Shown: piece by piece, positions 6,102 to 28,600 of the stretch
How the letters are laid out: each line of letters starts with the position of its first letter
How positions within the stretch are numbered: the stretch's first letter is position 1
Virus record (IMG/VR): IMGVR_UViG_3300024252_000004
Span: 186,001 to 250,000 of that record
DNA: 64,000 nucleotides
Direction: 5' to 3' (one strand)
Made by a program: the position numbers and the translations under genes
The notes under the pieces: generated by a model
What the model saw: only the letters and a program-made list of their open reading frames with translations
Told to the model about the DNA's origin: nothing
Database searches by the model: none

Positions 6102-6117
6102 AGATCCTATTCGGATT

Positions 6118-6184: not shown

Positions 6185-6496
6185 ATGGCCACTCCTATTG
6201 TTACCACTGATGATGGAACCTACACCTATTCTACGAGCCTTAGGCGGTGGGTCTGTACGGCTGGGAGAATCCCCGGTATGAGTGGTGGATTCCATCTCAA
6301 TTGCTGTGTTCACCTCACGTTTGGTGCGGAGCTTAGTGCTGTGGCACTCAAGGAAGGGTTCACCCGCGAGGACTTTGGTTTCTTCACGAAGCCTGAGAAG
6401 CCTGAGAAGTCTGTTAAGGTGAAGAAGCTTCGCACTGGAAAGCCCGGTGTTCGTCGCAGCAAGGTCAAGAATTTCGAAGAGCTTTTCAGTCTGTGA
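6185..6496 (+). CDS. hypothetical protein
   Basis: GAGG RBS; follows promoter. Confidence 0.65.
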   Translation: MATPIVTTDDGTYTYSTSLRRWVCTAGRIPGMSGGFHLNCCVHLTFGAELSAVALKEGFTREDFGFFTKPEKPEKSVKVKKLRTGKPGVRRSKVKNFEELFSL

Positions 6497-6535
6497 TTGA
6501 CTCCCTGAGCCACTTAGGGTACAACTCTCTGTAAT

Positions 6536-6611
6536 GGCGAGATACCCAAGTGGCCTAAGGGGCGCGGTTGCAACCCGTGTATCGTCGGTTCAAATCCGAC
6601 TCTCGCCTCCA
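6536..6611 (+). tRNA. tRNA-Cys(GCA)
   Basis: GGCGAGA/TCTCGCC acceptor, TTGCAAC loop, GGTTCAAATCC T arm, encoded CCA. Confidence 0.93.
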
Positions 6612-6628
6612 ATGCCTGGAGAAATAGG

Positions 6629-6868
6629 ATGAACGAAGTTAAAGCCCAACGGTGGTATGTGTACCCGGAAGGTGCCGGAAAGGGTGAAGGGAAAGACCTT
6701 TACGATTTCGGTCTTAGGCTCACGTCTTGTGGCACAGATGAAGATCCTCAGGAGCTTCTGGATTCGTGGGACGAATTGAGTAATGATAATCTGATCATTG
6801 TTCTCTGCACACATGATGGATCTGGTTGGCTGCGTGCCACCGATAAGTTGAACCCCACAGTCTCTTAG
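6629..6868 (+). CDS. hypothetical protein
   Basis: GGAG RBS. Confidence 0.55.
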   Translation: MNEVKAQRWYVYPEGAGKGEGKDLYDFGLRLTSCGTDEDPQELLDSWDELSNDNLIIVLCTHDGSGWLRATDKLNPTVS

Positions 6869-7239
6869 TGAGAGACGCAAACAAAGTAAAGGAGGCCATA
6901 ATGGCTAACGCTGAGACTACTCGTAACTTCTGTCAGAACGGCGGACGTGTTGCGCATTTTCACGAGACGGATGATGACGGTCCTCTGATCGCAACCATCG
7001 CATACACTCGCACTGATGAGGGCGAGATCCTCTTCGGTTCCACCATCTATCGCCCGGGTGATGACCCGTGGACGAAGCAGCCTCACACTGAGACTGCCAT
7101 TGGTCGGGCGACTGTGCGTCCTATCTCCATTCCCGATGCTGATATGTCCGGTGCTGAGCGCAAGGTCTATGTGCGGGAGGCTATGAAGACCAACTACCGT
7201 GGTAGTCGAGTTCGGGTTCGGGCAGTCTCGACTGACTGA
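6868..7239 (+). CDS. hypothetical protein (likely start ATG 6901)
   Basis: AAGGAGG RBS before ATG 6901; strongly biased codons. Confidence 0.7.
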   Translation: MRDANKVKEAIMANAETTRNFCQNGGRVAHFHETDDDGPLIATIAYTRTDEGEILFGSTIYRPGDDPWTKQPHTETAIGRATVRPISIPDADMSGAERKVYVREAMKTNYRGSRVRVRAVSTD

Positions 7240-7247
7240 ATGAATAT

Positions 7248-7341
7248 GGGGCGGTACGCCATATGTGGACCGCGAGCGAACGACAAACTGTGAGGGGTAA
7301 AGATCCCCTGCTGTAGGGCCCGATCCCTACCTGCCCCACCA
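7248..7341 (+). ncRNA. tRNA-like RNA with degenerate anticodon arm
   Basis: GGGGCGG/CTGCCCC-ACCA acceptor, long variable arm AGGGG/CCCCT, T stem GTAGG/CCTAC with non-canonical loop; no foldable anticodon arm. Confidence 0.65.
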
Positions 7342-7645
7342 TTCGTGACAATGAAGTTTCCGTAGAGTACATCGCTATTTGTAGTGGTAGCTAATACTCA
7401 AACTATAGATAGGAGGTGACTGATGGAATTTCTTCTTAGAATTCTGAGACATATGGATTTTCCATTCTAATTGAGTGGGGTCCGTGACTGAGCCTAATGC
7501 TTAGGCTATATAACTGCCAAAGAGTCCTGTGCGTTTTGCCTTGTATCGCGGTAGAGAACGACAGTTATATAGTTAGGACAGGGTATGCCAAGAAAGTAAA
7601 TCAGAGTCATGCACCCGTATGTATACACACAGACGGAGGTGTTAT

Positions 7646-7840
7646 ATGACAAAAGAAGAAGCGATTTTGGTAAGGAATCTTATTGACGGAATGGAAGAGA
7701 AGCGTTGGGGAGGCACTCTGTATGAAGGTACAGAATGTTTGGGCTGCTACATTGTGGTAGACGAAGATGAGACTCAGACGCATGAACCCGACTGCCTTTG
7801 GCATAGGGTCATGGAGATAATCAATAAGGTTCTGGAGTAG
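7646..7840 (+). CDS. hypothetical protein
   Basis: GGAGGT RBS. Confidence 0.6.
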   Translation: MTKEEAILVRNLIDGMEEKRWGGTLYEGTECLGCYIVVDEDETQTHEPDCLWHRVMEIINKVLE

Positions 7841-7868
7841 ATGGGGCGTCGGCCCCTTGCTCCGACAT

Positions 7869-7945
7869 GCGTGCGTAGCTCAGTTGGATAGAGCATCGGT
7901 TTCCTAAACCGAGGGTCGCAGGTTCGAGCCCTGCCGCGCGTACCA
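7869..7945 (+). tRNA. tRNA-Arg(CCT)
   Basis: canonical cloverleaf, TCGGT-TTCCTAA-ACCGA, CCA end. Confidence 0.95.
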
Positions 7946-8122
7946 TATTTCCGTTCGATGATCGTAGCTCTTTTCTGTAAAGGAATGGGGAGCCGTTAAA
8001 GATCGATAGTGTGTTCTTCCGAGCATGATAGAAAGGTTTAGCTAAGTCTATCGGAGGCCCATTTGAAAAGCTTTGTTTTTCAGAAGCAAATTCTGATTAG
8101 TTAAACTTCAAAGGATATAGCG

Positions 8123-8338
8123 ATGCCTACAACTAAGATTGATGTGACTCCAAAGGGTCTTGCATTGCTTAGACTAATGTGGTGGCCGGAAGGTTCCGGA
8201 CCTATTGGGGCTATGCGCTGTATCGTAACTCTGATCAATCTTCTCGCAGAAGAGAAGGGAATTGATCTCGATTCTGTTGTCGTTGAACACAACGGACATA
8301 AATACTCAGGCTCTCCCCCAAGGAGGGTCAAACCTTAA
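8123..8338 (+). CDS. hypothetical protein
   Basis: AAGGA RBS. Confidence 0.5.
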   Translation: MPTTKIDVTPKGLALLRLMWWPEGSGPIGAMRCIVTLINLLAEEKGIDLDSVVVEHNGHKYSGSPPRRVKP

Positions 8339-8476
8339 GGTAAAGAAATGCTACGTTGTTCTAGATTTTATCGCTGGCGTAATCGTCCAGTATCTCGTTT
8401 TCATGACGACCGTTACAATCATCGAGCCAATCGTCGTTGGCGTCGATAACTCAATACTCCTACTAAGGAACACACA

Positions 8477-8737
8477 ATGAAGAATCGTATTTTCGGAATC
8501 CTGGCAATCTGTCTTGCTATCGGCACTGGATGCGCAGAGTCTAAGGTGATTGATGGTCGCGTTTATCAGCCTTATGGCCTGATTGATGAGCATCAGGTCC
8601 GAGATCCTTGCGTTGAGTACCGTGCTTCTACTGAGAATGTCATTTGGGGCATCCTTCTTGTGGAGACTGTCGTTGCTCCTGTGTTGCTGTTTGGCTATGA
8701 GCTTTACGAGCCCGTTGGCAAGCGGCAGTGTGACTGA
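8477..8737 (+). CDS. putative lipoprotein
   Basis: LAIGTG-C lipobox plus a second hydrophobic segment. Confidence 0.65.
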   Translation: MKNRIFGILAICLAIGTGCAESKVIDGRVYQPYGLIDEHQVRDPCVEYRASTENVIWGILLVETVVAPVLLFGYELYEPVGKRQCD

Positions 8738-8757
8738 TAAATATATAGATTAAGAAG

Positions 8758-9006
8758 ATGCTTCATATTAGATTCCTTTTTCTGCTGATGACAGCTTGTG
8801 CTTCTCCGACTAAGGCGGAGTATGTTGATGCTTATGTGTCGTATCTCTGCTCCTGTAGTGAGAACGAAGAGTGTGAGGGTTACCTATCCTCATTCGAAAG
8901 CTGCGACTATGATCCTCAAGCTGGTCAGGAATGTGTAAGGGATCTGTCTGCACTTGATAACGAGTGTGAGTGGGCTCCCTTGTCTTGCGAATATGCTTGC
9001 CCTTAG
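8758..9006 (+). CDS. Cys-rich putative lipoprotein
   Basis: LLMTA-C lipobox, many Cys. Confidence 0.6.
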   Translation: MLHIRFLFLLMTACASPTKAEYVDAYVSYLCSCSENEECEGYLSSFESCDYDPQAGQECVRDLSALDNECEWAPLSCEYACP

Positions 9007-9020
9007 GAGTTCTGAAAGTG

Positions 9021-9263
9021 ATGATCTATACCGCACTGCTTGCAGATAGAATGGGAAGAACAAAGGTCTTCACGTTCCATGGATCAAAGACAAAGTCAGA
9101 AGCCTACATTGATTTCAGAAAGGCCATTCCTTTCACTGGTTTCGATGGGTTTAGGCTTTTGGCGATTGTGCCAGGAGAGCATGAGGTAACCTGTTGGGAT
9201 ATAACTCATACTTTTCCAAGAGACGTAACAGATACCGCTACGGACTTTATGTCGGAAGACTAA
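9021..9263 (+). CDS. hypothetical protein
   Basis: AGGAG RBS. Confidence 0.55.
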   Translation: MIYTALLADRMGRTKVFTFHGSKTKSEAYIDFRKAIPFTGFDGFRLLAIVPGEHEVTCWDITHTFPRDVTDTATDFMSED

Positions 9264-9300
9264 GCCTCAGGCTCGGTCACAATTTAACTCAGAGAGTTTC

Positions 9301-9534
9301 ATGTCTTTCACTGCTGCTATGATTATGATCCTTGTAGGAATCATTCTCGGCCTTCTGTTCGCTGCTGGTTGCGTGGGGGCCGTCTTTAAGATTGTCTTTT
9401 CGACAAAGGGCGGAACATTTAGTGATGTATCGAGTTTCTTCATCGCAAGTTTCGTTGGAATGGTAGTGTCCATCATGATCTTCTATGCCGGTCTCGTCTT
9501 TGGCGGGCTGGAACTAATTCAGATGTTTTTTTAA
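9301..9534 (+). CDS. small membrane protein
   Basis: two hydrophobic helices. Confidence 0.6.
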   Translation: MSFTAAMIMILVGIILGLLFAAGCVGAVFKIVFSTKGGTFSDVSSFFIASFVGMVVSIMIFYAGLVFGGLELIQMFF

Positions 9535-9620
9535 CAGGTAGAGATGCCTAAATTTAAACGCTTATATGTTTCGCCCAGGACATATTAAGTTTAATGTATT
9601 CTGGGTAATGGAGAATTAAC

Positions 9621-10013
9621 ATGTCTACTTATAAGAACACCGATCTTTTATCTGCTCTGGCTCAGAAGCTCTCTGCAAATGAGGCTATCTCTGCCATGGG
9701 AACTGCTGAGGCTGTCCTCGTCCCTCTGTGGGAGGGTGACCGTGCTCCCCGTAATCTGTGGGAGCGAGTCTGTGTTGCCTTCGGTGTTACGCTCACTGAC
9801 ATTGCGTGTCTGAAGGTTCGTTACAGCGCATCGTCTGGTTTCGACATTACTGGTGTTAGCTCCAGTGTGCTCCTTGAGCGTATGGATGCTGGTGCTGTTG
9901 TGACGATGGTTGTCAAGGCGATCAAGAAGAACTATGCCAGTACGAATGGTTGGGAGTCTGCCATCGAGTCTGCTCTCGCGGCTGTTGATGAGATTGATGT
10001 TGAGGCTCTCTGA
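9621..10013 (+). CDS. hypothetical protein
   Basis: GGAG RBS, biased codons. Confidence 0.7.
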   Translation: MSTYKNTDLLSALAQKLSANEAISAMGTAEAVLVPLWEGDRAPRNLWERVCVAFGVTLTDIACLKVRYSASSGFDITGVSSSVLLERMDAGAVVTMVVKAIKKNYASTNGWESAIESALAAVDEIDVEAL

Positions 10014-10295
10014 GGCTTAAGAGCCTCATTGTGTGTAGGCACGCGAGTCGTGCTACCTGAATCCGTGAGTTCCTGTTTGTAGTTGAACGCACTCAAGGCG
10101 AGACGGTCTGGACAATGAAGCCAGAGAACGGTGTCGATGCAAAATTCAACCTCCATCGACTGCACACATAGGCCACATCTTGAAGAGAGCCCTGTTGTAA
10201 GCTAGCAGGCTGATACTTGTTGACTCATAGATGGCCGCTGGCACACCGGTTAAAGTGTGCCCCCTTTTCTCTTCGGAAATAACTTGGAGTTCCTG

Positions 10296-10583
10296 ATGTC
10301 TTCTAATGATAGATTCATCCTTAATGTCGGCTGGTTCGATGAGGATTACTACGACTTCATTCCCGAAGATGCTGCCGGACGTGAGTACGAGACAGTAATT
10401 TGCAGAGGGTACAGCAATGACAAGGAGGAATTCGTTAGCACAAGCGATGCGTTTCCGCTGAGTGATGCACTCAATTTCATTCAGTCAATGGCAGAAAATC
10501 CTCCTGCTCGTAATATGACAATTGAGGAACTGAAGCTTGCATATGATGAGCTTAGTGAGAAGGCAAACAATCTCCTTCCTTGA
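10296..10583 (+). CDS. hypothetical protein
   Basis: GGAG RBS before ATG 10296. Confidence 0.6.
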   Translation: MSSNDRFILNVGWFDEDYYDFIPEDAAGREYETVICRGYSNDKEEFVSTSDAFPLSDALNFIQSMAENPPARNMTIEELKLAYDELSEKANNLLP

Positions 10584-10599
10584 AGCAAAGGAGCGCAAG

Positions 10600-10971
10600 A
10601 TGTCTGACGACAAAAGTAAGAAGCCTATCAACTGGGACGCGGAGCTACGGCAGATTGTCCGCGATGTTGAGAAGAACTTGAGGCTCAATAACAGAAAGCG
10701 TGCCAATTCAAGGGAGCACAAGATGCCAGAAGAGAAAAGCTATTTTGTTGTTAGAACTTATCCAAACCCAGTCAATGGGCAGGACTTCTCTGACATGATC
10801 AGAGTGAAGACTAGTCTTTCTAGGAATGAGCTTATCAAGGCTGCTTCCGAAGAGGTTGGTGGAAATGTAGACTTCGTGTTTGATGCAGATGATGTTGAAG
10901 ACGCAAAGCTCGAATCCAATCCATGTATTGTATGGCTCAAGCCATCAAAGAATTTCTCCCTAGAGTCCTGA
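10600..10971 (+). CDS. hypothetical protein
   Basis: AAGGAG RBS before ATG 10600. Confidence 0.6.
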   Translation: MSDDKSKKPINWDAELRQIVRDVEKNLRLNNRKRANSREHKMPEEKSYFVVRTYPNPVNGQDFSDMIRVKTSLSRNELIKAASEEVGGNVDFVFDADDVEDAKLESNPCIVWLKPSKNFSLES

Positions 10972-10994
10972 CGGATTCGGGCACAAACAATTTA

Positions 10995-11175
10995 TGATCA
11001 AGAGGCTCGAAAGACAGACAGTGTGCTTGTCTGTTTGTGAAGCCGCCTGTGATGAACAGGTCTTAGAATGGGAAACACACTTCCTTGAGATATGAGTTGC
11101 GTAGAAGCCGACTGGCTACGGCCGACAGGTGGAGCACTTTAAGCTCGCAGGTATCCAATCCTGCCTTGATCACCC
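10995..11175 (+). ncRNA. putative structured RNA closed by a tRNA-like acceptor stem and T arm
   Basis: TGATCAAG(10995)/CTTGATCA(11165) stem directly after GCAGG-TATCCAAT-CCTGC; several internal hairpins; gene-free region. Confidence 0.5.
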
Positions 11176-11662
11176 TTTTAAAACGAAATGGTCCTCTTCC
11201 GCGCTTTGTAGAGATCCTGCAAAGATTTGAGAATGGAAGAGTGTCAGACCATGGCGGTGACTTGATGACACAAGTAAATTCTCCCCGCCTCCATTTCAAA
11301 TAACAATAAGTTCCACTCCTTTAAAGAGGTTGTGCGCTTAGTTAGACTTGACTCAAAGATGGAATAAAGAGTCTCCCCTTTAAATCTCCGTTGCCCTGCG
11401 GTCTGGTTGGTAACCGACTCCGGGTAATGCAATGACCTCACCAGGGTCAGGTTGTCGTCAAAGTCATATTAGCTGAACGGTCCCAACTTACCGGGAAATC
11501 CCTCGCAAGTGCTTAGACTAATTGTTGCTATGAATCTCCAACCCTCTGCAATTTGCAGGGTAAAAATCTACTGCCGGGTGAGACGCGATTAAGCGGAGTC
11601 CGGCCAACAAACAATCAGCGCATTCCCATTCTCCCGACAAGAATATAAAAAGGTAAATATCA

Positions 11663-12544
11663 ATGAATAAAATTATTACGCTCCTTCTCGCGTGTTCGCT
11701 TTCCTTTAGCACTCCCGCAGAAGCTGCAACTGATCCTGTTGAGCAGGCTGCATATGCTGAGGCTATTAACGCACTGGAACAGCTAATTGCACAGCAGACT
11801 ACATCTCCATCTATCGCGGGTAAGATTCGTCTTACCGTGATGACTATGGAAGATCAGGCTGCTCGCCATCGAGAGAATCTTAAGAAGCTTATCCCTGGGA
11901 CGGGCTCTTATATTGCTCTCAGGGAAGTCATCCTCAATCAGGAGGCGAGAGCCGCAGCGATTCGTCGTGGTTTGGCGATGGCTGACGCTGCCGGATATCA
12001 GTATATGGCTATTATCAGTAGCCGACTGATCTCGATCAATGGGCTTCTCATGCCTACGCAGGCCCTTCTTGATCAGCTTATCTATGGGCCAGGTTATATG
12101 CCTAGCTATGATAGTGCTGAATGGAATCCTACTGGTCCGGCAGGAGATATTGGCAGTAGCGATCAGACTTGGCTTGTTGGCCTGTTTGATGGGGGGATCC
12201 GAGGCTCTAAGAGTAGTAAGTCTGATGATGTTGAGTGGGCACCGTGGTCCGAGGAAGACCCGGAGTCTGATAATCCCGGCCCTGTTGCGCTTGGTGGCGA
12301 AGATGCTCCGTCAATTACTGCTCAGTCTGAAGGCCCCGTTGGTCCGTGGATGCTGAGCGTTGGGATGGACCCGTACATGGTAGCGACACGCTACCGTCTT
12401 GGACAGCTTTCTGAGCAGTTTGATACACCTCTCGCCTATGGTGTCACTGTGAATGGTGTCGAGATTCTTACCGTGGTTCATGGGGCAGACTACGCAGAGT
12501 CTTTCGATATGAACGGCTCCAGAGTTGACTGGCATATGCTCTAA
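11663..12544 (+). CDS. secreted protein of unknown function
   Basis: Sec signal peptide (MNKIITLLLACSLSFSTPAEA). Confidence 0.7.
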   Translation: MNKIITLLLACSLSFSTPAEAATDPVEQAAYAEAINALEQLIAQQTTSPSIAGKIRLTVMTMEDQAARHRENLKKLIPGTGSYIALREVILNQEARAAAIRRGLAMADAAGYQYMAIISSRLISINGLLMPTQALLDQLIYGPGYMPSYDSAEWNPTGPAGDIGSSDQTWLVGLFDGGIRGSKSSKSDDVEWAPWSEEDPESDNPGPVALGGEDAPSITAQSEGPVGPWMLSVGMDPYMVATRYRLGQLSEQFDTPLAYGVTVNGVEILTVVHGADYAESFDMNGSRVDWHML

Positions 12545-20766: not shown

Positions 20767-21162
20767 ATGAAAAGAATAAACAACATTCATTCGTTCGTTG
20801 GAACCGGCGCTTTCCAAACTGGGAAAGAGATGGCTCTTTCGAATGGAGAAGATTTTCATCTGGCGGCATTCCTTAAGCGGAGCAAGTCTCTTATCAGGAT
20901 TGGTGTCAATCGCAATGTCTCTCATGCTCGATTCATTAGGGTTGAGGATGGAGAGGTGTTGTCATTTCTTCATGCTGAAATGGATGCATTGATTGCTGCC
21001 CGTCCTGGCGACACATTGGTTGTCGTTAGATGGACGAAGGGCGGTGAAGTTTCAATGAGTCGTCCTTGCGAACACTGCCAGCGCTTCATTGCGAAGGCTG
21101 GAATCACTCGTGTCATCTATTCTGGATGGAATGGTGACTATTTCTCTGAGAGGTTCATGTGA
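20767..21162 (+). CDS. zinc-dependent cytidine/adenosine deaminase-family protein
   Basis: HAEMDAL and PCEHC motifs. Confidence 0.85.
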   Translation: MKRINNIHSFVGTGAFQTGKEMALSNGEDFHLAAFLKRSKSLIRIGVNRNVSHARFIRVEDGEVLSFLHAEMDALIAARPGDTLVVVRWTKGGEVSMSRPCEHCQRFIAKAGITRVIYSGWNGDYFSERFM

Positions 21163-21800
21163 AAAGAATTGAAATTCTTGGAGACATTCCTCGAAGAGTG
21201 GGTCTTGCATGTTCTGGTGGCGTTGACTCAATGGCGGTTGCTGATTTCCTTATCAAAGGCGGGCGGCAAGTCATTCTGATCAATTTCGATCATGGCACGG
21301 AGTACGGCGGAAGAGCAAGAGAAATGCTCAAGGCGTATTGTGAAGACAAGAATCTTATGAGGGTTTTTCCTAAGACATTCGATCCACCACCCAATGGTGT
21401 ATCTGTCGAAGCTTATTGGCACAAGCTACGGTATGAGTTTTACCGTCACATTGCACAGACAATGAAGCTTGATGCAATCATCACCTGTCATCACTTGGAT
21501 GATCAGGTGGAGACATGGATTATGACAGCAGCGACGGGTAATCCGAGGCTGATTGCTCATAGCAACAACGAGACCAAGGTAATTAGACCCTTTCTTTTGA
21601 CGAGGAAGAGTGTCTTTGAATCGTGGTGTGAAAGAAAGGGGGTTCCTTACCTTGAGGATCCTTCTAACGAAGATACGAAGTACACTCGCAACCTTGTGAG
21701 GCACGAAGTTGTGCCAGCTATGCTGAAGGTTAACCCTGGAATGCATAAGGTTATTGCGAGAAAGGTTAGGGCTGCGTATGATAAACGTAGCGAGCGGTAG
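21159..21800 (+). CDS. tilS: tRNA(Ile)-lysidine synthetase (catalytic domain only)
   Basis: SGGVDS PP-loop, HHLDDQVET, IRPFL, EDPSNEDTKYTRNLVR; adjacent to tRNA(CAU). Confidence 0.9.
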   Translation: MKRIEILGDIPRRVGLACSGGVDSMAVADFLIKGGRQVILINFDHGTEYGGRAREMLKAYCEDKNLMRVFPKTFDPPPNGVSVEAYWHKLRYEFYRHIAQTMKLDAIITCHHLDDQVETWIMTAATGNPRLIAHSNNETKVIRPFLLTRKSVFESWCERKGVPYLEDPSNEDTKYTRNLVRHEVVPAMLKVNPGMHKVIARKVRAAYDKRSER

Positions 21801-21862: not shown

Positions 21863-22637
21863 CTGAACCTTGATTTTCGGTTCAAATCTGAGTACAATTT
21901 CCTTACGGAGATTTGTATAATGATTGTGGTCAAGGTAAAGCCAGTCAGAATTCTGAATGGTTATCGTGTAATCTATAATCCTGAATACCACAGGGCCATG
22001 TCCAGTAATAATTGGAGTGGTTATGTTTATGAACATATTGTAGTTGCAGAAGAAATGATAGGCAGAAATTTGAGAGAGGAAGAGGTCGTTCATCATTTAG
22101 ATGGTGATCGTTCTAACAATCGAATAGAAAATCTGCTTGTACTTTCTAATGCTATGCACGCTAAGCTTCATGGTTGGCTTGAAAATGGTGGCGTATTTAA
22201 GGAGACTGAATACGTTAAGAGGGTGAATTCAGAGAAATCTAAGGAAGTAAGAACAATCAATAGGTTTTGCAAAGTCTGCAAAAAAACATTGCAGGCTAAA
22301 GAGAAACTTTATTGCTCAAACAAATGTCGAGGCATCGGAACTCGTAAGGTTGAAAGACCTTCGAGTGAAGAGTTAGCAAAAGACATTGAGAGTATGAGTT
22401 GGCTCGCCATTGGAAGAAAGTATGGTGTTAGCGATAACGCTGTAAGAAAATGGGCAAGGTCTTTTGAGCTTCTATGACAATTCTGAGCCAAGCCAGTCAG
22501 GCGTGACTGGAAGGTGCAACGACTAGTTGGTGTCAGACGAACTTCTGACGTAATACAACATTAGCGCCCTCCACCCTAACGTGTAATGACGAGGGTGATG
22601 ATATAGTCTGCGGAGTTAGGAAACTAACACAAACGGG
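21863..22637 (+). mobile_element. group I intron in tRNA anticodon loop (after CAU), carrying an HNH homing endonuclease
   Basis: 5' exon ends in U, intron ends in G; core motifs AATTCTGAGCCAAG, GGTGCAACGACTAG, GATATAGTC; P3 GAGGGTG/CGCCCTC. Confidence 0.88.
21920..22477 (+). CDS. intron-encoded HNH homing endonuclease with Zn finger and HTH tail
   Basis: YEHIVVAE...VHHLDGDRSNNRIENL...H; CKVC...YCSNKC; IGRKYGVSDNAVRKW. Confidence 0.9.
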   Translation: MIVVKVKPVRILNGYRVIYNPEYHRAMSSNNWSGYVYEHIVVAEEMIGRNLREEEVVHHLDGDRSNNRIENLLVLSNAMHAKLHGWLENGGVFKETEYVKRVNSEKSKEVRTINRFCKVCKKTLQAKEKLYCSNKCRGIGTRKVERPSSEELAKDIESMSWLAIGRKYGVSDNAVRKWARSFELL

Positions 22638-23131: not shown

Positions 23132-24646
23132 ATGAAGATTATGAATGCACGGTTTGGTTTCGCTACCAATAGCAGCAGCACGCACAGTGTGATCGTACTA
23201 CCTGAAGGCACACCTATGCCTGCCACAGACGAGTGGGAGAGTTTTGGGTGGCAATACTTCACTGCCGCTGACGAGGAGTCTAAGCGTAAGTATGCAATGC
23301 TTACTATTCAGAGCACAATCCGTAGGGTGCTGAGTAAATCCGGTCTATTTAACTGGCAGGACAAAGGTGATATGTCATCTTACCTGATGAATGCATGGTT
23401 TGATGCAGGTATAGACCTTGAGAACTATGACCGCTATACGAACATGGAAGGTAGCATTGACCACCAGTCTTTGACTGGTTTGCCGATGCGTTGGGACGGA
23501 AAGATGATTGACATTCCATTCGCTAAGGCGTTCATGGATGCAATGGTCAACTCCAATGTTATTATCCTTGGTGGTAATGACAATGATGATCGTACCCATC
23601 CCCTTTCTTATTCGGGAGAGGCTTGGGATCTTATCGAGAAAGCGAATCTGCCCCTTGATGGCCTTTCTTCAAACGTTGTTAGGTTCGATGCAGAATACAA
23701 CTACTGGACCTCATTCAATAGAAGTAATGGGGCCAAGCTAAGGTTCCGTATCTCTGGCGATGAGCCTATTGAGAAGTCTTCATACCCTGAGCTTGTAGAC
23801 ATTAAGATTACGGATATGTGTCCGTATGCGTGTGCGTTCTGTTACATGGGCAGTACGAGTTCTGGCCTTCATGCGAAGGCAGAGACCGTCAATGCTTTCA
23901 TCAGAGAGCTTTCGAGTAAGAATGTTTTTGAGATTGCCATTGGTGGCGGAGAGCCAACGATGCATCCGTACTTCGTTTCGATTCTGAAGTATGCAAGACT
24001 CAATAACATTGTTCCGAATTTTACCACGAAGAATCTTTCGTGGCTCAGAGATCCTACTCAGTGGGTAGATATCATTCGGGAGTGTGGAGCATTCGCTTAC
24101 TCTGCGGACTCTAAGAAGGACGTAGTAAATCTTGTGAGCCTGCTTGATACCAATGGTATCTCTCGTAGCAAGGCGACCATCCAGATTATTCCAGAAGTCC
24201 TAAGTACGTGGGCTCTTGACGGCATCCTTCGTGAGGCCGGGAGTTATGGTATGACTGTGACTCTTCTTGGTTATAAGACAACCGGAAGAGGTGCAGAGTA
24301 TGCCGAGAACAAGCTTGACACCGACTGGCTGAGTGTCGTGACAGAGATTCAAGAAGAGGGTTCGAAGCTTCCGAGGATTGGTATTGATACTATCCTTGCA
24401 GCAAGCACAGACCTATCGGATTTTGATCCTAAGCTTTACACTCTTGAGGAGGGTAAGTTCAGCATGTATATTGATGCCGTAGGTGTCAAGGCTGGTCCGA
24501 GTTCCTTTGCGAATGAGGATGAGTTTGTTAGTCTTGGTGAGAAGCCAAGATACGCTGGATATCCAAAGCCTGGATACGTTACAGAGCTTAAGCTCCCCCA
24601 TAATGATTGGAATGATTCACTCTGGGAAGCGTTTCGTTCCTACTAG
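23132..24646 (+). CDS. radical SAM protein with N-terminal GFATNSSS domain
   Basis: CPYACAFC, GGGEP motifs. Confidence 0.88.
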   Translation: MKIMNARFGFATNSSSTHSVIVLPEGTPMPATDEWESFGWQYFTAADEESKRKYAMLTIQSTIRRVLSKSGLFNWQDKGDMSSYLMNAWFDAGIDLENYDRYTNMEGSIDHQSLTGLPMRWDGKMIDIPFAKAFMDAMVNSNVIILGGNDNDDRTHPLSYSGEAWDLIEKANLPLDGLSSNVVRFDAEYNYWTSFNRSNGAKLRFRISGDEPIEKSSYPELVDIKITDMCPYACAFCYMGSTSSGLHAKAETVNAFIRELSSKNVFEIAIGGGEPTMHPYFVSILKYARLNNIVPNFTTKNLSWLRDPTQWVDIIRECGAFAYSADSKKDVVNLVSLLDTNGISRSKATIQIIPEVLSTWALDGILREAGSYGMTVTLLGYKTTGRGAEYAENKLDTDWLSVVTEIQEEGSKLPRIGIDTILAASTDLSDFDPKLYTLEEGKFSMYIDAVGVKAGPSSFANEDEFVSLGEKPRYAGYPKPGYVTELKLPHNDWNDSLWEAFRSY

Positions 24647-24862
24647 GAGAGAAATATGTGTAAGAGTAATGAAGAGTGCGAGCACAAGAAGGTTCATCCT
24701 TTGAGTAAGCTTATCTACTCCAACTTTGTTCTGACCAGATTTACCGCTGCCGGCGGAGGAGTGTTTGCATTCGCGCACTCTTGTCTGCACATCGTCATGC
24801 ATGGATTTGGTTTTCCCTGTCCATAAGGGGCTCCTTCGGTTCTGCGGCGCGATACTTCAAAT

Positions 24863-24890
24863 TTTTCTAAATTTCCTGTAGGACGTTATA
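24863..24890 (+). promoter_or_regulatory. phage promoter motif upstream of the ncRNA cluster
   Basis: TTTTCTA-N15-GTTATA. Confidence 0.8.
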
Positions 24891-24924
24891 TTCTACCATC
24901 GATGGAGAAAAAACGGAAGCGCAT

Positions 24925-24953
24925 TTGACTTTCAACAAAAACCTTCGTATAAC
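24925..24953 (+). promoter_or_regulatory. sigma70-like promoter for the ncRNA cluster
   Basis: TTGACT-17 nt-TATAAC. Confidence 0.7.
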
Positions 24954-24990
24954 AACAGCACGAGGGTAGTTAATACCTTCCAAAAATTCC

Positions 24991-25127
24991 GGGGCTGTGG
25001 AGAAATTCGCAATTCAGTTTGAAGCCTCGCTCCTTACGTGGAGCAACCCACAGCAAACTCACAAGCATAGTAACTCGTTTACCTGAAAAGTAGAAGATTG
25101 TTGGTGCAAATCCAGCCGGCCCCACCG
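24991..25127 (+). ncRNA. chimeric tRNA-like RNA A: GAA-anticodon scaffold with module inserted in the D loop
   Basis: GGGGCTG/CGGCCCC acceptor; TTTAC-CTGAAAA-GTAGA; ~60-nt D-loop insert AGTTTG-aagCCTC-GCTCC/GGAGC-CAAACT-CACAAGCA. Confidence 0.75.
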
Positions 25128-25150
25128 AACACATTTTAAATAAGTATTAA

Positions 25151-25221
25151 CGAAAGGCAGCACGGAGAAGGTGCGGCCCTTACTGGGACGGTCGTTGGTT
25201 AAAGTCCAACCCTTTCGACCA
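25151..25221 (+). ncRNA. degenerate tRNA-like RNA with shortened anticodon arm
   Basis: CGAAAGG/CCTTTCG-ACCA, D stem GCAC/GTGC, CCC-TTACT-GGG, T arm GTTGG/CCAAC. Confidence 0.7.
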
Positions 25222-25236
25222 TACTTAGAATTAGTT

Positions 25237-25370
25237 TATCTGTTCATCATCACAAAGCTTACAAGCATAGATAGATCAATTGGTTAGATCATCGGACTAT
25301 TAATCCGAAGGCTGCGGGTTCAATCCCCGTTCCTTGCAACAAAAACCCAGCTTTGTACCTCGAACAGATA
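25237..25370 (+). ncRNA. chimeric tRNA-like RNA B (Y RNA-like): module replaces the acceptor stem
   Basis: TATCTGTTC/GAACAGATA and ACAAAGCT/AGCTTTGT stems with ATCATC/ACCTC loop, TACAAGCA, then full D, anticodon (ATT) and T arms. Confidence 0.78.
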
Positions 25371-25378
25371 CCCCTTCT

Positions 25379-25451
25379 GCCCTTATAGTGTCAAGTTAAC
25401 ACGCCGGCCAAATAAACCGGAACTAGAGTATCGAATCTCTTGAGGGCACCA
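25379..25451 (+). ncRNA. degenerate tRNA-like RNA
   Basis: GCCCTTA/TGAGGGC-ACCA; CCGG/CCGG stem with non-canonical loop (no U33); atypical T loop. Confidence 0.68.
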
Positions 25452-25459
25452 CATAACAT

Positions 25460-25553
25460 ATGTTTCTGAGCCTGGATGGCACCCCTAATAGGGGAAGAGA
25501 GGTTCGTTTCCTCTGCGGGACAAAAGCCGGTTCGAAGCCGGACAGAAACATCA
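25460..25553 (+). ncRNA. tRNA-like RNA with two T arms
   Basis: ATGTTTCTG/CAGAAACAT closing stem; GCC/GGC, CCCCT/AGGGG, AGAGG-TTCGTTT-CCTCT and CCGG-TTCGAAG-CCGG arms. Confidence 0.6.
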
Positions 25554-25606
25554 CTACATTTTATGCCGGATGATCCCTCGTTAAATCGCGGGGCCGGCTC
25601 CCATTT

Positions 25607-25729
25607 TCCCCGTCCAATCATTTCAATCTTACAAGCATAGCTCACTTGGTAGAGCATTAGAATTGAGATCTAAAGGTTGCAGGTTCGATCCCTGCTGCAA
25701 ACAAAACAGATTGATCCCTCGGACGGGGA
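25607..25729 (+). ncRNA. chimeric tRNA-like RNA C (Y RNA-like): module replaces the acceptor stem
   Basis: TCCCCGTCC/GGACGGGGA and TCAATCT/AGATTGA stems with AATCATT/TCCCTC loop, TACAAGCA, then D, anticodon and T arms. Confidence 0.78.
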
Positions 25730-25856
25730 GCCCTTTCATCATGGTGTTCCATGATGTAAAATGAAGCGAACATCTTTGCGTAGGCTCAATAACCGTTTGA
25801 TGCATTGAATGTTGAAAAGTGCTCCAGTCACCAGATAATCATAGGGTGACGCACAT

Positions 25857-26015
25857 GCCGAAGTGGCGTAATTGGTAAACGCAACAGTATATGGAACTGT
25901 CTTTAAAAAGTCACCAGCTTTAAACCTCGACCCGTTAGAAATAATTGGTCAACACTTCAAGCTTACAAGCAGCCTTCGGGCAAAAATGTTGGTTCGAGTC
26001 CAACCTTCGGCACCA
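25857..26015 (+). ncRNA. chimeric tRNA-like RNA D: module inserted in the variable arm
   Basis: GCCGAAG/CTTCGGC-ACCA, Leu-type D arm, ACAGT-ATATGGA-ACTGT, insert AGCTT-aaaCCTC-GACC/GGTC-AAGCT-TACAAGCA, canonical T arm. Confidence 0.78.
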
Positions 26016-26038
26016 TATAACTCCGCTCAAAACAATAG

Positions 26039-26079
26039 ATTGATCCTGCAAGTCACACAAACTGATTTGCAGGATCAAT
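26039..26079. terminator. long hairpin ending the ncRNA cluster
   Basis: ATTGATCCTGCAAGTCA/TGATTTGCAGGATCAAT. Confidence 0.55.
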
Positions 26080-26114
26080 TCATTTATGTATAGACCCTTT
26101 GCTAAGAGGCAGAT

Positions 26115-26399
26115 ATGTACGACGGTACTGATAAGCGTAGCCATAAACAGTATGGGCACCCAACCCTTGATGAGTCAAAGATTTTCAAGTGGTTTGGTTT
26201 TGATAATCCTCATTTTCCAGACTTCTACCTTTACAGTAACTCTACTGGAACAGTAGGCATTTGGATGCATGATGGTTCTCCGATAATTGAAGGTTCCGCT
26301 AAGTGTCTTGGTTCAATCTACACTCGTCTTGCGCCAATTGAGCGAATTCTTTTTATGGAAGAGTATGATGCTATGGCCGCATTGTTTGGAGTCAGCTAA
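26115..26399 (+). CDS. hypothetical protein (CxG...L..EE family)
   Basis: GAGG RBS; C-terminal motif shared with 26399, 43779, 47406. Confidence 0.6.
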   Translation: MYDGTDKRSHKQYGHPTLDESKIFKWFGFDNPHFPDFYLYSNSTGTVGIWMHDGSPIIEGSAKCLGSIYTRLAPIERILFMEEYDAMAALFGVS

Positions 26400-26719: not shown

Positions 26720-28600
26720 ATGACCAATACAAATACAGAAAGAGTTGAGTCTCTCGGTCCAGCCGAGACGATCATCAGTGCTCTTATCAAAGCTACAGAC
26801 CACATGGTCCACAACCGTCCCGGCATTGTTGTTTCAGACAATAGCAACGTTGTGGGCACAAAGTGGTATCCTGTTACTCACAAGAGTGAGGAAGGACAGG
26901 ATGTTGTCTACAGGCTTGATAAGGTTGGGGCCAAGAGTGTCCGCACCAGAATTGGTATTCGTGGTGAAGATGGTATCGTCCGTAGCAACGGTCGTGTCGT
27001 CGGTGAGTACCGTAAGCCTGGAATCTACAAGGAAGTTGCATCTTTCCTTTACAGGCAGGTCGCTAATGTTTGGGACATGGACAATGAGTTTGTAGCTCGT
27101 TGGGCATCTTGGTCTATGAATCAGGAGTACCGTGATCTCAAGGTTGTTCTTGCTGCATTCTCTATGGTTCAGAACCGTATGGGTGCCCCAATCAGAGAGG
27201 GTGGAGAAATCCTATTCTATGATGATGATTACCGTGATGTTGGTGAGGCCATGTGTCTCGTCAGGAGTAAGGGTAAAGACATTGATGCTAAGCTGCTGAT
27301 CCGTATTGGTGATGTTCTCCGTCAGGATGATATCGCTGCAATGAATCGTGAGCTTGGTTTCGGTATCTCTACTCGTAGACCTGCGATGGGAAGGTACAAT
27401 AAGGTTGTTGAGAAGTGGCTGCGTTACCGCGAGAATAACCCTCGTATGCTCGCCGGCCTTATCAAGTCTGGTCAGAGGAAGATGATCATGACTCTCGCTA
27501 AGAGAGTCGGATACAAGCCTCAGACTGAGGATTTCTTCAAGGTTCTTAGGTGGAAGCAGAAGCAGTCAGAAGATGGTCGCCGTACTATGATGATTGGTGT
27601 GGAGGTTTCCGAGGCAGAGTCTTGGGTGAACCTTACTGAGCGTCAGATTTGCGAGAAGATTATGTCTGACAAGCCGAACTTCAAGCGGATCACTGGTCTG
27701 CTTGGGACGACTACAGTTGGGCTTACTCGTGCGATTATGGCTGCGGCTATTGATGGCGGGTGTCTATCTGATGCTGACCTAATCATTCTCACTCCTACTC
27801 TTGAAGAGCTTGGACTCTTGAAGGTTGCGGCTATTAAGCAGAGGTGGGAGACTGCCACACTTAATGCTACAAACCAGAGAGCAATGAACATTGCTCGTAA
27901 TGTCAAGAGCAGAGAGACTGCTGATGTCTTGAAGGCTGGTGCTGACGCTGCTGTTCAGAAGGCAGTGGAGGAGAAGGTTGCTAACCTTCGTCTCTATGTC
28001 ATTGTCGATAAGTCTGCATCTATGGATGGAGCAATCGAGAAGGCGAAGCAGTATCTTTCCATGTTCATTCATGGCTTCCCACTGGATAAGATCCATGTTT
28101 CTATCTTCAACACTGTAGGTAGAGAGCTTAGGATTAGAAACAGGTCGAGTGCCGGAGTTACTCAGGCATTCATGGGTCACAGTGCGAGCGGTGGAACTAA
28201 CTATGCTGCCGGTGTTTCTGCGCTGGCGAATAGAAAGCCTGCTGCTGACGAAGATGCTATCATGCTTTTCGTTGGAGATCAGGACCCTCATGCATCTGGT
28301 GGTGTCCGTAGTAACTTCGCAAGTGTTGTCAGAGCTTCTGGCATTAACCCCGTCTCCTTCGCTCTCATTGAGGTAGGCAGAAGGCAGGGGCGCTGTGTCG
28401 ATACAACGGCTACTGCTCTTGGCATTCCATGTGTCAGGATTCAGGAGGACACTTTTCAGGATCCTTACGCAGTTCAGAGAGTGTTTACTCACTTGATTGA
28501 GTCTGCGCCTATCGGAGCTTCTAGTGCGAGAGCACCAAGGAAGACTTTGATTGATACGATCTTGGAGACAGAGCTTCTTGCTAAGCCGGCTTGGGCGTAA
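26720..28600 (+). CDS. vWA-domain protein with large basic helical N-terminal region; Ro60/TROVE-like candidate
   Basis: MIDAS VIVDKSASM, GGTNY, LFVGD in the C-terminal third (vWA is secure); TROVE assignment inferred from architecture and flanking tRNA-like RNAs. Confidence 0.7.
   Translation: MTNTNTERVESLGPAETIISALIKATDHMVHNRPGIVVSDNSNVVGTKWYPVTHKSEEGQDVVYRLDKVGAKSVRTRIGIRGEDGIVRSNGRVVGEYRKPGIYKEVASFLYRQVANVWDMDNEFVARWASWSMNQEYRDLKVVLAAFSMVQNRMGAPIREGGEILFYDDDYRDVGEAMCLVRSKGKDIDAKLLIRIGDVLRQDDIAAMNRELGFGISTRRPAMGRYNKVVEKWLRYRENNPRMLAGLIKSGQRKMIMTLAKRVGYKPQTEDFFKVLRWKQKQSEDGRRTMMIGVEVSEAESWVNLTERQICEKIMSDKPNFKRITGLLGTTTVGLTRAIMAAAIDGGCLSDADLIILTPTLEELGLLKVAAIKQRWETATLNATNQRAMNIARNVKSRETADVLKAGADAAVQKAVEEKVANLRLYVIVDKSASMDGAIEKAKQYLSMFIHGFPLDKIHVSIFNTVGRELRIRNRSSAGVTQAFMGHSASGGTNYAAGVSALANRKPAADEDAIMLFVGDQDPHASGGVRSNFASVVRASGINPVSFALIEVGRRQGRCVDTTATALGIPCVRIQEDTFQDPYAVQRVFTHLIESAPIGASSARAPRKTLIDTILETELLAKPAWA

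What the first reader, a model, noticed from the sequence alone, without database searches (positions are those of the whole stretch)
24991..26015. One RNA module grafted onto three different positions of a tRNA scaffold
Seen: four RNAs share a module of outer stem, internal loop with CCTC(G) opposite a CA-rich strand, inner stem, then YACAAGCA (25060, 25260, 25630, 25964). Stem sequences differ between copies but pairing is kept. In B (25237-25370) and C (25607-25729) the module closes the 5'/3' ends in place of the acceptor stem. In A (24991-25127) it is circularly permuted and inserted in the D loop; in D (25857-26015) it is inserted in the variable arm. Established: bacterial YrlA Y RNAs join a Ro60-binding stem to a tRNA-mimic domain. 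Inference: the module is a protein-binding handle, probably for the adjacent 626-aa vWA protein, that presents different faces of a tRNA as baits, decoys or adaptors. I do not know of a described family with this permuted grafting.
Basis: partly seen in the sequence, partly recalled or inferred. Interest (0 to 1): 0.93.

Follow-up and report, generated by a model that had tools for sequence, protein, structure and literature searches.

The report
Ro60-type RNA handle on tRNA scaffolds
A huge bacteriophage encodes a cluster of tRNA-shaped RNAs that all carry the same small two-stem module, and comparison with hundreds of relatives ties that module to a neighbouring Ro60-like protein, making this an unusually modular branch of the known Y RNA/Ro60 partnership.

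Summary
Four RNAs (A 24991-25127, B 25237-25370, C 25606-25730, D 25857-26015) share one module. It has an outer helix Y, an internal loop ending in invariant CUC, an inner helix X of about 8 bp, then YACA(A/C)GC.

A covariance model finds 140 copies in 71 related huge-phage loci, 138 of them on the strand of the vWA gene. All 13 modelled pairs covary (89% paired, against 59% when shuffled).

The module sits at the acceptor end (B, C), the variable arm (D, by far the commonest) or the D arm (A, rare). Relatives add a fourth form, a circularly permuted tRNA with the topology of YrlA.

The 626-aa vWA protein has no Pfam TROVE hit, but its predicted fold matches Ro60 structures best. The gene, a conserved 336-aa partner, a JAB peptidase and module RNAs travel together in huge phages and in Myxococcota, Verrucomicrobiota and Leptospira-type genomes. 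The RNAs often lie within 100-900 nt of the gene.

Bacterial copies carry the YrlA motif GNCGAAG and hit the Rfam YrlA model below its threshold (E about 1e-5).

Best reading: a divergent Ro60/Y-RNA system whose protein-binding handle has been grafted onto several tRNA scaffolds. Binding itself is inferred, not shown.

The parts
24991..25127 (+). RNA A. tRNA-like: acceptor 24991-24997/25117-25123, anticodon arm 25078-25094, T arm 25100-25116. The module takes the place of the D arm.
   Evidence: (tRNA model positions 9-63, 18.8 bits)
25016..25067 (+). Module of A, permuted form. Xb 25016-25021, loop ending CUC 25022-25028, Y hairpin 25029-25044, 5' loop strand 25045-25053, Xa 25054-25059, core CACAAGCA 25060-25067.
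   Evidence: R1 hit 25012-25071, 33.6 bits, E 2e-5
25237..25370 (+). RNA B, acceptor-end graft. Ya 25237-25245, Xa 25252-25259, core 25260-25267, tRNA body 25265-25337 with a mismatched 7-position acceptor, A/C-rich linker 25338-25348, Xb 25349-25356, ACCUC 25357-25361, Yb 25362-25370.
   Evidence: tRNA 62.5 bits; z -4.05
25606..25730 (+). RNA C, acceptor-end graft with a 3-bp acceptor. Ya 25606-25615, Xa 25623-25629, core 25630-25637, D arm 25640-25655, anticodon arm 25657-25673, T arm 25679-25695, UGC 25696-25698, linker 25699-25707, Xb 25708-25714, UCCCUC 25715-25720, Yb 25721-25730.
   Evidence: tRNA model positions 5-66, 50.1 bits; z -3.72
25857..26015 (+). RNA D. Complete tRNA shape with a 7-bp acceptor and encoded ACCA. 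The module occupies the variable-arm position.
   Evidence: tRNA 47.7 bits, with the insert between model positions 44 and 45
25916..25971 (+). Module of D, permuted form. Xb 25916-25920, loop ending CUC 25921-25928, Y hairpin 25929-25950, 5' loop strand 25951-25958, Xa 25959-25963, core 25964-25971. An extra GCC-UUCG-GGC hairpin at 25972-25981 is absent from the L004 ortholog.
   Evidence: R1 hit 25912-25975, 35.9 bits, E 5e-6
26038..26080 (+). Terminator-like 18-bp hairpin closing the RNA cluster.
26720..28600 (+). 626-aa protein. N-terminal beta domain, about 300 residues of helical repeats, and a C-terminal vWA domain with a complete MIDAS. Ro60/TROVE-like by predicted fold.
30929..31939 (+). 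336-aa conserved partner. It lies directly downstream of the vWA gene in most relatives. The model shows beta-barrel (OB-like) domains, a long helix and an alpha/beta domain.
33665..34042 (+). 125-aa Prok-JAB metallopeptidase with the E...HxH...S..D motif. Third conserved gene of the set.

Best explanation
A-D are members of a large, previously unmodelled branch of the Ro60/Y-RNA world. The shared module is the docking handle for a protein of the conserved gene set, most likely the Ro60-like vWA protein. The module has helix Y, an asymmetric internal loop with invariant CUC, helix X of about 8 bp, and the invariant junction strand YACA(A/C)GC. The attached tRNA-shaped body is the effector or adaptor part, as in YrlA and Yrn1, where the tRNA-like domain recruits a second protein.

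In huge phages the handle has been combined with tRNA scaffolds in several topologies. B and C have the acceptor end blocked. D has every tRNA feature free, including the CCA end. A has the D arm replaced. Relatives add a YrlA-type form with a closed acceptor stem.

Shown: the module is real and covaries, it is genetically linked to the vWA / 336-aa / JAB set in phages and bacteria, and the protein's predicted fold resembles Ro60.

Inferred: direct binding, which protein binds, and what the complex does. Candidates are RNA surveillance or capture of host tRNA-binding enzymes, by analogy with the Thermus phage phiLo Ro60, its Yrl RNAs and host PNPase.
For: 1. Structure. R1 finds 140 hits, 138 on the vWA strand. 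In those, 89.3% of cells pair against 59.4% when shuffled, 556 changes are compensatory against 170, and slid controls give 43-55%. In 57 linear copies, X positions 5-8, which detection did not require, pair in 65-84% against 40-61% when shuffled.

2. Conserved unpaired bases. CUC is 99-100% and A-C-A-N-G is 100/100/100/-/100%.

3. Linkage.
- 43 or more of 68 IMG/VR vWA loci have modules within 10 kb.
- In GTDB contigs, modules lie 50-900 nt upstream of the gene in at least 16 loci.
- In the Verrucomicrobiota/Leptospira group they lie between the vWA gene and its partner gene.
- In the Corallococcus coralloides chromosome a single module RNA lies directly upstream of the gene, with no tRNA array nearby.
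- In a scan that ignored vWA, 16 of the 17 loci with R1 hits came from contigs that carry the vWA gene, and 83 unrelated loci had none.

4. Only three genes are conserved neighbours: vWA, the 336-aa gene and JAB.

5. Protein. The five best Foldseek PDB hits are all Ro60/TROVE structures over about 550 columns (E 2e-7 to 2.5e-5). The BFVD hits include TROVE and DUF2828 proteins. A broad profile weakly hits human RO60 (E 0.003) and the phiLo TROVE protein in collinear positions.

6. Tie to YrlA.
- Relatives carry RNAs in the order T arm, closed acceptor hairpin, D arm, with the same module.
- The Myxococcota copies carry GCCGAAG, which fits GNCGAAG.
- The Rfam YrlA model hits L254 (39.0 bits, E 3e-5), L244 (39.9 bits), L243 and L004 3188-3302 (37.3 bits, E 5e-6).

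7. Precedent. Phage Ro60 proteins with Y-like RNAs encoded just upstream are known (PMC4201824, PMC12135203).
Against: - No Pfam, NCBIfam or PHROG TROVE hit for the protein or for any homolog tested.
- Foldseek TM-scores are only 0.3-0.39 and the model's pTM is 0.48.
- All YrlA hits are below the gathering score of 69 bits. They rest largely on the tRNA-like core, which tRNA dimers can mimic (PMC4201824).
- A-D themselves give no YrlA hit at E<=10 and lack the CGAA motif.
- The vWA operon usually lies inside tRNA-rich RNA islands, so part of the phage linkage could be positional.
- One 436-kb contig has a module cluster about 225 kb from its vWA gene.
- Virus Rctr197k has the gene but no R1 hit within 10 kb.
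- Binding has not been tested.
Confidence: 0.6

Rival explanations
1. Processing signal. The Y-loop-X duplex, about 20 bp when stacked, would be a cleavage or maturation site (RNase III-like, RNase P/E or a phage nuclease) that releases non-standard tRNAs from a polycistronic transcript. Proximity to the vWA gene would then only reflect a shared RNA island.
For: - The RNAs are packed head to tail with a few bases between Y stems.
- The loci are dense in tRNA genes.
- The stem / internal loop / stem layout resembles phage RNase III sites (established knowledge of the T7 R1.1-type sites).
Against: - In 124 of 140 copies the module lies inside the tRNA body at the variable arm, where cleavage would split the RNA.
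- Invariant CUC and ACANG bases are not a feature of RNase III sites.
- A single module RNA sits next to the vWA gene in bacterial chromosomes without tRNA arrays.
- Module-only RNAs carry hairpin cargo of 20-45 nt.
Confidence: 0.1
2. Working tRNAs. D-type RNAs, and possibly processed B-type RNAs, would be decoding tRNAs. The oversized variable arm, or the leader-trailer helix, would be an identity or protection element for a phage synthetase or modification enzyme, or a shield against host tRNA nucleases.
For: - B, C and D exceed the Rfam tRNA threshold.
- 115 of 118 variable-arm copies have a matching 5' acceptor strand, and 36 of those encode CCA.
- tRNA-modifying-type genes lie nearby in the window: a PP-loop ATPase and a radical SAM enzyme.
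Against: - Anticodons differ between orthologs: B has AUU and its L004 ortholog has UAU.
- Some anticodon loops are odd (8 nt, or G at position 33), and many D arms have 6-bp stems with 3-4 nt loops.
- C has a 3-bp acceptor, and the YrlA-type relatives have closed acceptors.
- The radical SAM and PP-loop genes are not conserved neighbours.
Confidence: 0.12
3. Small self-cleaving ribozyme, or a mobile intron-like insert. Circular permutation is typical of hammerhead and twister ribozymes. The A and D inserts would be excised.
For: - The same motif occurs in permuted and linear forms.
- A few bases are invariant.
- A group I intron elsewhere in the window shows that this phage hosts introns.
Against: - No ribozyme or intron family matches at E<=10.
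- Only about 8 invariant bases and two plain helices.
- Loop sizes do not fit a bulge-helix-bulge motif.
- The insert position is fixed (variable arm) and the inserts are tied to one protein operon across phyla.
Confidence: 0.05

Closest known systems
YrlA Y RNAs of bacteria and phages (Rfam RF02553; Chen et al. 2014, PMC4201824)
   Same: - Encoded beside a Ro60-type gene.
- Stem / internal loop / stem handle formed by the RNA ends.
- tRNA-like domain with T and D arms.
- Relatives of this family have the same order (T arm, closed acceptor hairpin, D arm), and the bacterial copies keep GNCGAAG.
   Different: - The window RNAs lack CGAA and give no YrlA hit. Relatives reach only 28-40 bits against the threshold of 69.
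- The invariant signature here is CUC plus YACA(A/C)GC.
- The handle joins the tRNA at the variable arm, the acceptor end or the D arm, not at the anticodon stem.
- Each genome carries several (2-7) copies.
Deinococcus radiodurans Yrn1 with Rsr and PNPase (RYPER)
   Same: The Ro-binding stem takes the place of the acceptor end and an anticodon-like arm is retained, as in B and C. This is the working model of one RNA tethering Ro60 to a second protein.
   Different: Yrn1 keeps the metazoan-type Ro helix on both strands. No sequence relation was detected. The partner proteins here are a 336-aa OB-like protein and a JAB peptidase; there is no known link to PNPase.
Thermus phage phiLo Ro60 with Yrl1/Yrl2 (PMC12135203; PDB 9KOP, 9L5Y)
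   Same: Phage-encoded Ro60 with Y-like RNAs encoded just upstream of the gene. It is the top Foldseek match of the 626-aa protein.
   Different: The phiLo protein is a recognisable TROVE protein of about 500 aa and its Yrls carry the CGAA bulge. Here the protein has an extra N-terminal beta domain, no Pfam TROVE signal, and RNAs with a different signature and topologies.
Class II, tRNA-Sec and allo-tRNAs with long variable arms (PMC5389517)
   Same: D-type RNAs are full cloverleaves with a long extra arm. Many have 6-bp D stems with tiny loops, like tRNA-Sec.
   Different: The extra arm is 50-65 nt, with two helices, a conserved internal loop and a conserved junction strand shared with non-tRNA topologies. 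Anticodons are not conserved.

Membership tests
YrlA-type Y RNA (Rfam RF02553) | Scores at or above the Rfam gathering score (69 bits) | tested here: not met
   No YrlA hit at E<=10 in window 24800-26200. Relatives score below threshold: L254 39.0, L244 39.9, L004 37.3, L243 32.2, L029 28.1 bits.
YrlA-type Y RNA (Rfam RF02553) | Encoded adjacent to a Ro60/TROVE gene | tested here: inconclusive
   A-D end 0.7 kb upstream of the 626-aa gene, and adjacency recurs in phages and bacteria. The protein is Ro60-like only by predicted fold, not by Pfam TROVE.
YrlA-type Y RNA (Rfam RF02553) | Terminal stem with a bulge carrying GNCGAAN0-1G (the CGAA motif) | tested here: not met
   The 5' strands of A-D have no CGAA. 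Myxococcota copies have GCCGAAG, and Verrucomicrobiota copies have UCGAAGU or UCGAAUG.
YrlA-type Y RNA (Rfam RF02553) | tRNA-like domain in permuted order: T arm, closed acceptor stem-loop, D arm | tested here: not met
   A-D keep the normal tRNA arm order. The permuted order with the same module is found in relatives, with cargo of 87-101 nt in L018, L021, L025, L029, L073 and others, and in L285, L254 and L244.
YrlA-type Y RNA (Rfam RF02553) | Bound by Ro60 in cells | not testable with these tools
   Needs immunoprecipitation or EMSA.
tRNA (Rfam RF00005) | Covariance-model score at or above 29 bits | tested here: met
   B 62.5, C 50.1 (model positions 5-66 only), D 47.7 bits with an 85-nt insert. 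A scores only 18.8 bits.
tRNA (Rfam RF00005) | Free 7-bp acceptor stem ending in NCCA | tested here: inconclusive
   D has 7 bp plus ACCA, and A has 7 bp plus ACC. B has 5 of 7 pairs buried under the X and Y helices. C has 3 bp.
tRNA (Rfam RF00005) | Anticodon conserved between orthologs | tested here: not met
   B has AUU and the L004 ortholog has UAU. The module around them is nearly identical while the tRNA bodies differ.
Ro60/TROVE protein (Pfam PF05731 plus vWA) | Pfam TROVE domain | tested here: not met
   Only VWA-family domains are found in the window protein, in 10 remote relatives and in 7 bacterial homologs.
Ro60/TROVE protein (Pfam PF05731 plus vWA) | Helical-repeat ring followed by a C-terminal vWA domain with MIDAS | tested here: inconclusive
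   MIDAS residues D430, S432, S434, T493 and D520 are invariant. The AF2 model is all-helical over residues 104-420. The top five PDB matches are Ro60/TROVE, but TM is only 0.3-0.39. Weak collinear profile hits go to RO60 and 9KOP.
Small self-cleaving ribozymes / group I introns | Match to a known catalytic core | tested here: not met
   No such family at E<=10 in 24800-26200.

The most novel reading that the evidence does not exclude
Huge phages carry a kit of 'tRNA-Y RNA chimeras'. These would be fully tRNA-shaped RNAs with open CCA ends (D type), plus acceptor-blocked and acceptor-closed versions, all bearing one handle for a Ro60-like / OB-like / JAB protein complex. The kit would let the phage deliver that complex to different tRNA-binding machines of the host, such as synthetases, EF-Tu and the ribosome, processing enzymes or anticodon nucleases. 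The same system would have a simpler one-RNA ancestor in Myxococcota chromosomes.
Probability: 0.25. Interest if true: 0.85.

Novelty: new variant of a known kind. Interest (0 to 1): 0.7.

Why it matters
Y RNAs and Ro60 are conserved from bacteria to humans, yet what the tRNA-like part of bacterial Y RNAs is for remains open.

This family offers a natural experiment. One handle is joined to tRNA scaffolds in four topologies, with hundreds of covarying examples. It also has a conserved three-gene protein set and cultivable bacterial carriers (Corallococcus).

It enlarges the Ro60 world with a clade that domain databases miss. It supplies a covariance model for RNAs absent from Rfam. It also points to a new layer of tRNA mimicry in huge-phage biology.

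Tried and rejected
- An exact-pattern scan for the B/C junction plus T loop in IMG/VR returned only the same phage and coding-sequence false positives.
- blastn of the region against deposited phages gave only tRNA-fragment matches. tblastn of the protein found a single deposited phage, Virus Rctr197k.
- Sequence searches for TROVE were all negative or marginal: Pfam, NCBIfam, PHROGs, PDB phmmer and profile searches, and the 1.84-billion-protein HMM search followed by Pfam on remote hits.
- The radical SAM, PP2C, ligase and PP-loop genes were rejected as partners of the RNAs because they are not conserved neighbours.
- The fold search for the 336-aa partner gave no significant match, only weak OB-fold hits at E>0.02. 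PADLOC gave no defence-system match beyond a weak JAB hit.
- The idea of an anti-Shine-Dalgarno or 16S 3'-end mimic (CCUC plus ACAAG) was dropped. The base before CUC is C or A about equally, and the element order does not fit.
- The idea that the 5' loop strand 'ACCA' mimics a CCA end was dropped, because only its first A is conserved.
- The idea of an archaeal bulge-helix-bulge or split-tRNA processing site was dropped, because loops of 5-10 nt do not fit.
- I did not build a separate covariance model for the linear forms. I used a descriptor with reverse-strand and shuffle controls instead.
Full report
**Source and first pass.** The window is part of a huge-phage contig of about 395-414 kb (IMG/VR UViG_3300024252_000004).
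- Rfam's tRNA model hits the cores of B (62.5 bits), C (50.1 bits, model positions 5-66 only) and D (47.7 bits, with about 85 nt inserted between positions 44 and 45). It hits A only weakly (18.8 bits).
- No YrlA, Y RNA, ribozyme, GOLLD or ROOL family appears in 24800-26200 even at E<=10.
- ARAGORN calls only the core of B.

**The observation.** YACAAGCA lies on the + strand at 25060, 25260, 25630 and 25964. Reading outward from it, every copy has the same parts:
- an inner helix X whose 5' strand ends in CU;
- a 5' loop strand that starts with A;
- an outer helix Y closed by a C-G pair;
- on the other strand, a loop that ends in CUC just before the G that opens Y.

The two strands between the junction and Y have a fixed length, 13-14 nt and 13 nt. 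MFE folds recover X and Y in A, B and C (z -1.3, -4.1, -3.7) and Y in D.

B and C are 'linear': the RNA ends form Y. A and D are 'permuted': Y is capped by a loop and X opens into the host tRNA.
- B keeps a 7-position acceptor-like stem with two mismatches.
- C keeps only GCA/UGC.
- D is a complete cloverleaf with encoded ACCA.
- In A the module replaces the D arm.

**Orthologs.** A 406-kb sister phage (L004, vWA protein 83% identical) has all four RNAs in the same order.
- C has three compensatory changes in Y and one in X.
- D has an unrelated Y helix that still pairs, and it lacks the small UUCG hairpin.
- The tRNA bodies and anticodons of B differ (AUU against UAU) while the module is almost unchanged.

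The module is therefore the more strongly constrained part.

**The family.** I fetched 76 huge-phage loci through the vWA protein.
- A simple descriptor found dozens of copies.
- With fixed geometry, CUC and Y of at least 6 bp there are 95 hits on the vWA strand and none on the opposite strand. The opposite strand serves as an empirical null.
- A covariance model of the permuted form (R1) found 140 matches at E<=1 in 71 sources, 138 of them on the + strand.
- On the resulting alignment, 89.3% of cells pair against 59.4% in shuffles, and 556 cells carry changes on both sides against 170.
- Partners slid by one to three columns give 43-55%, and all 13 pairs covary.
- That alignment is fitted to the model, so I also tested positions that detection did not require. 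In 57 distinct linear copies, X positions 5-8 pair in 65-84% against 40-61% when shuffled (0 of 500 shuffles reach the observed value). Y is usually 9-12 bp.
- Unpaired invariants across 135 distinct modules are CUC (99-100%) and A-C-A-N-G (100/100/100, N = A 82% or C 16%, G 100%), followed by C (86%).

**Topologies.**
- Of the 140 R1 hits, 124 are followed directly by a T arm, which is the variable-arm position.
- Of 118 distinct variable-arm copies, 115 have a matching 5' acceptor strand about 50 nt upstream, and 36 of those encode CCA.
- The D-arm placement of A occurs only in the window and in L004.

Linear copies fall into four groups:
- acceptor grafts with a 3-bp GCR/YGC stem, like C;
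- acceptor grafts with a conserved GCAAAGA/UCCUUGC stem, like B;
- module-only RNAs with hairpin cargo of 20-45 nt;
- a group absent from the window, with cargo of 87-101 nt in the order T arm, closed acceptor hairpin, D arm, anticodon arm.

The last group is a circularly permuted tRNA with the module at the variable-arm position. That is the architecture described for YrlA (PMC4201824).

**The protein.**
- The 626-aa product has only a marginal VWA_2 hit. PHROGs and NCBIfam give nothing, and PDB sequence searches return no Ro60/TROVE entry (the profile finds only vWA-domain hits).
- It has more than 1600 homologs, many on contigs of 200-600 kb.
- An AlphaFold2 model (pLDDT 79, pTM 0.48) shows a small N-terminal beta domain, about 300 residues of helices and a vWA domain. 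The MIDAS residues are invariant.
- Foldseek against the PDB ranks five Ro60/TROVE structures first: 9KOP, 1YVR, 2NVO, 2I91 and 9L5Y. Their E-values run from 2e-7 to 2.5e-5 over about 550 columns, ahead of matches that cover only the vWA domain over about 200 columns. TM-scores are only 0.3-0.39.
- BFVD gives TROVE and DUF2828 proteins.
- A profile search of 1.84 billion proteins reached relatives of 520-590 aa, which is Ro60 size. None of them has a Pfam TROVE hit.
- A broader profile weakly hits human RO60 (E 0.003, vWA region) and the phiLo TROVE protein (E 0.7, N-terminus), both in collinear positions.

I read this as a probable but unproven, very divergent Ro60-like protein.

**Linkage.**
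- Across 68 phage loci only three window genes are conserved neighbours: the vWA gene, the 336-aa gene at 30929 and the 125-aa gene at 33665. The radical SAM, PP2C and ligase genes of the window are not.
- The 125-aa protein is a Prok-JAB peptidase.
- The 336-aa protein models well (pLDDT 88) as beta-barrel domains, a long helix and an alpha/beta domain. It has only weak OB-fold matches.
- Modules lie within 10 kb of the gene in at least 43 loci. Most are 4-7 kb downstream and some are 0.5-7 kb upstream.
- These loci are tRNA-rich RNA islands, which could inflate the apparent linkage.

Three results argue against a purely positional explanation.
1. In a scan that ignored vWA, R1 hits occurred in 17 of 100 loci, and 16 of those 17 came from contigs that carry the gene.
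2. In an independent collection (GTDB genomes), the closest homologs have modules 50-900 nt upstream of the start codon in at least 16 loci, which is the window's layout. In the Verrucomicrobiota/Leptospira group, two to four module RNAs lie between the vWA gene and its 336-aa partner.
3. In true chromosomes without tRNA arrays (Corallococcus coralloides NZ_CP172866, and a 4.25-Mb deltaproteobacterial contig) one or two module RNAs lie directly upstream of the gene.

The partner and JAB genes follow the vWA gene in 66 and 45 of the 80 GTDB loci.

There are exceptions. One 436-kb contig has a module cluster about 225 kb from its vWA gene. Virus Rctr197k has no R1 hit near the gene.

**Tie to YrlA.**
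- The Myxococcota RNAs have the YrlA topology and the module signature (YACA[AC]GC, and CACUC before the G that opens Y). Their 5' strand reads GGCCGAAGAGGCC, which contains GNCGAAG, the Ro60-binding motif of YrlA (PMC4201824).
- Rfam's YrlA model matches L254 9755-9867 over its full length (39.0 bits, E 3.3e-5). It also matches L244 12467-12530 (39.9 bits), L243 5095-5153 (32.2 bits), L029 15801-15857 (28.1 bits), and a module-less YrlA-like RNA in the sister phage, L004 3188-3302 (37.3 bits, E 5e-6).
- All of these are below the gathering score of 69 bits. They lean on the tRNA-like core, which tRNA dimers can imitate (PMC4201824). This supports resemblance and probable common descent, not membership.
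- Phage Ro60 proteins with Y-like RNAs encoded just upstream are already known (PMC4201824, PMC12135203). Jumbo phages with TROVE proteins have also been noted (PMC7824862).

**Mechanism.** The most economical reading is that the module is the docking site for the Ro60-like protein or its operon partners. CUC and YACANGC lie about one helical turn apart on helix X and would face the protein. The tRNA-shaped body would then be the part presented to something else. The phage copies would differ in which tRNA features stay free.

The shown steps are the structure, the conservation and the linkage. The binding partner and the biological role are inferred. The rivals are a processing signal, working tRNAs with a special arm, and a ribozyme or intron. 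The module's internal position, the non-conserved anticodons and odd arms, and the absence of catalytic-core matches count against them respectively. None is excluded by experiment.

**Verdict.** The finding is a new variant of a known kind: a divergent Ro60/Y-RNA system. Three things are new relative to Rfam and the literature I could search:
- a distinct RNA signature;
- a conserved 336-aa and JAB gene pair;
- handles placed on tRNA scaffolds in several topologies.

Noticed in passing
window 25151-25221, 25378-25451, 25460-25553, 25565-25598: Between A-D lie three further module-less tRNA-like RNAs. Two end in an encoded CCA, and their T loops and anticodon arms are non-standard. There is also a hairpin. 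All are conserved in L004, with compensatory acceptor changes. Neither ARAGORN nor the Rfam tRNA model calls them in the window.
   Followed up: partly
L004 3188-3302: The sister phage has a YrlA-like RNA that matches the full Rfam model (37.3 bits, E 5e-6). It has the order T arm, closed acceptor, D arm and lacks the module signature. It sits next to a 687-aa ORF that the window lacks.
   Followed up: partly
window 22170-22630: Group I intron (72 bits, above the Rfam threshold) about 2.4 kb upstream of the RNA cluster. Its host gene was not examined.
   Followed up: no
window 28615-28688: tRNA-like gene directly after the vWA stop codon (Rfam 37.4 bits). ARAGORN reports an abnormal anticodon loop. 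A counterpart lies at L004 8271-8341.
   Followed up: no
L029 15919-16011: Bacterial small SRP RNA (57.7 bits, above threshold), encoded by a 497-kb phage contig immediately after its module RNAs.
   Followed up: no
L126 3149-3989 (contig UViG_3300032782_000001, about 99 kb) against L045 (about 332 kb): A second cluster of five or six module RNAs lies about 225 kb from the vWA gene of the same 436-kb contig. The RNAs are therefore not confined to the operon.
   Followed up: partly
L207-L237 (GTDB MAG contigs): Contigs carrying the closest vWA homologs and modules are mostly binned as Myxococcota, and true Myxococcota chromosomes carry the distant homolog. This may hint at the hosts of this phage clade and at gene flow between host and phage.
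   Followed up: no
L206 (Virus Rctr197k, KX853510.1) 6070-9899 and 9983-11932: This is the only deposited phage with the gene. The gene is annotated only as a misc_feature, right after a 35-tRNA array. A ThiF-like gene lies 7 kb downstream. There is no R1 hit within 10 kb.
   Followed up: partly
L239 12216-12261; L073 9753-9839; L244 265-350: An Acido-Lenti-1 RNA hit lies next to a module RNA. tRNA-Sec-like hits, below threshold, occur in the same RNA islands.
   Followed up: no
window 21159-21800 and 23132-24646: A PP-loop (TilS-like) ATPase and a 504-aa radical SAM protein flank the intron and the RNA cluster. They are present in L004 but are not conserved neighbours elsewhere.
   Followed up: partly
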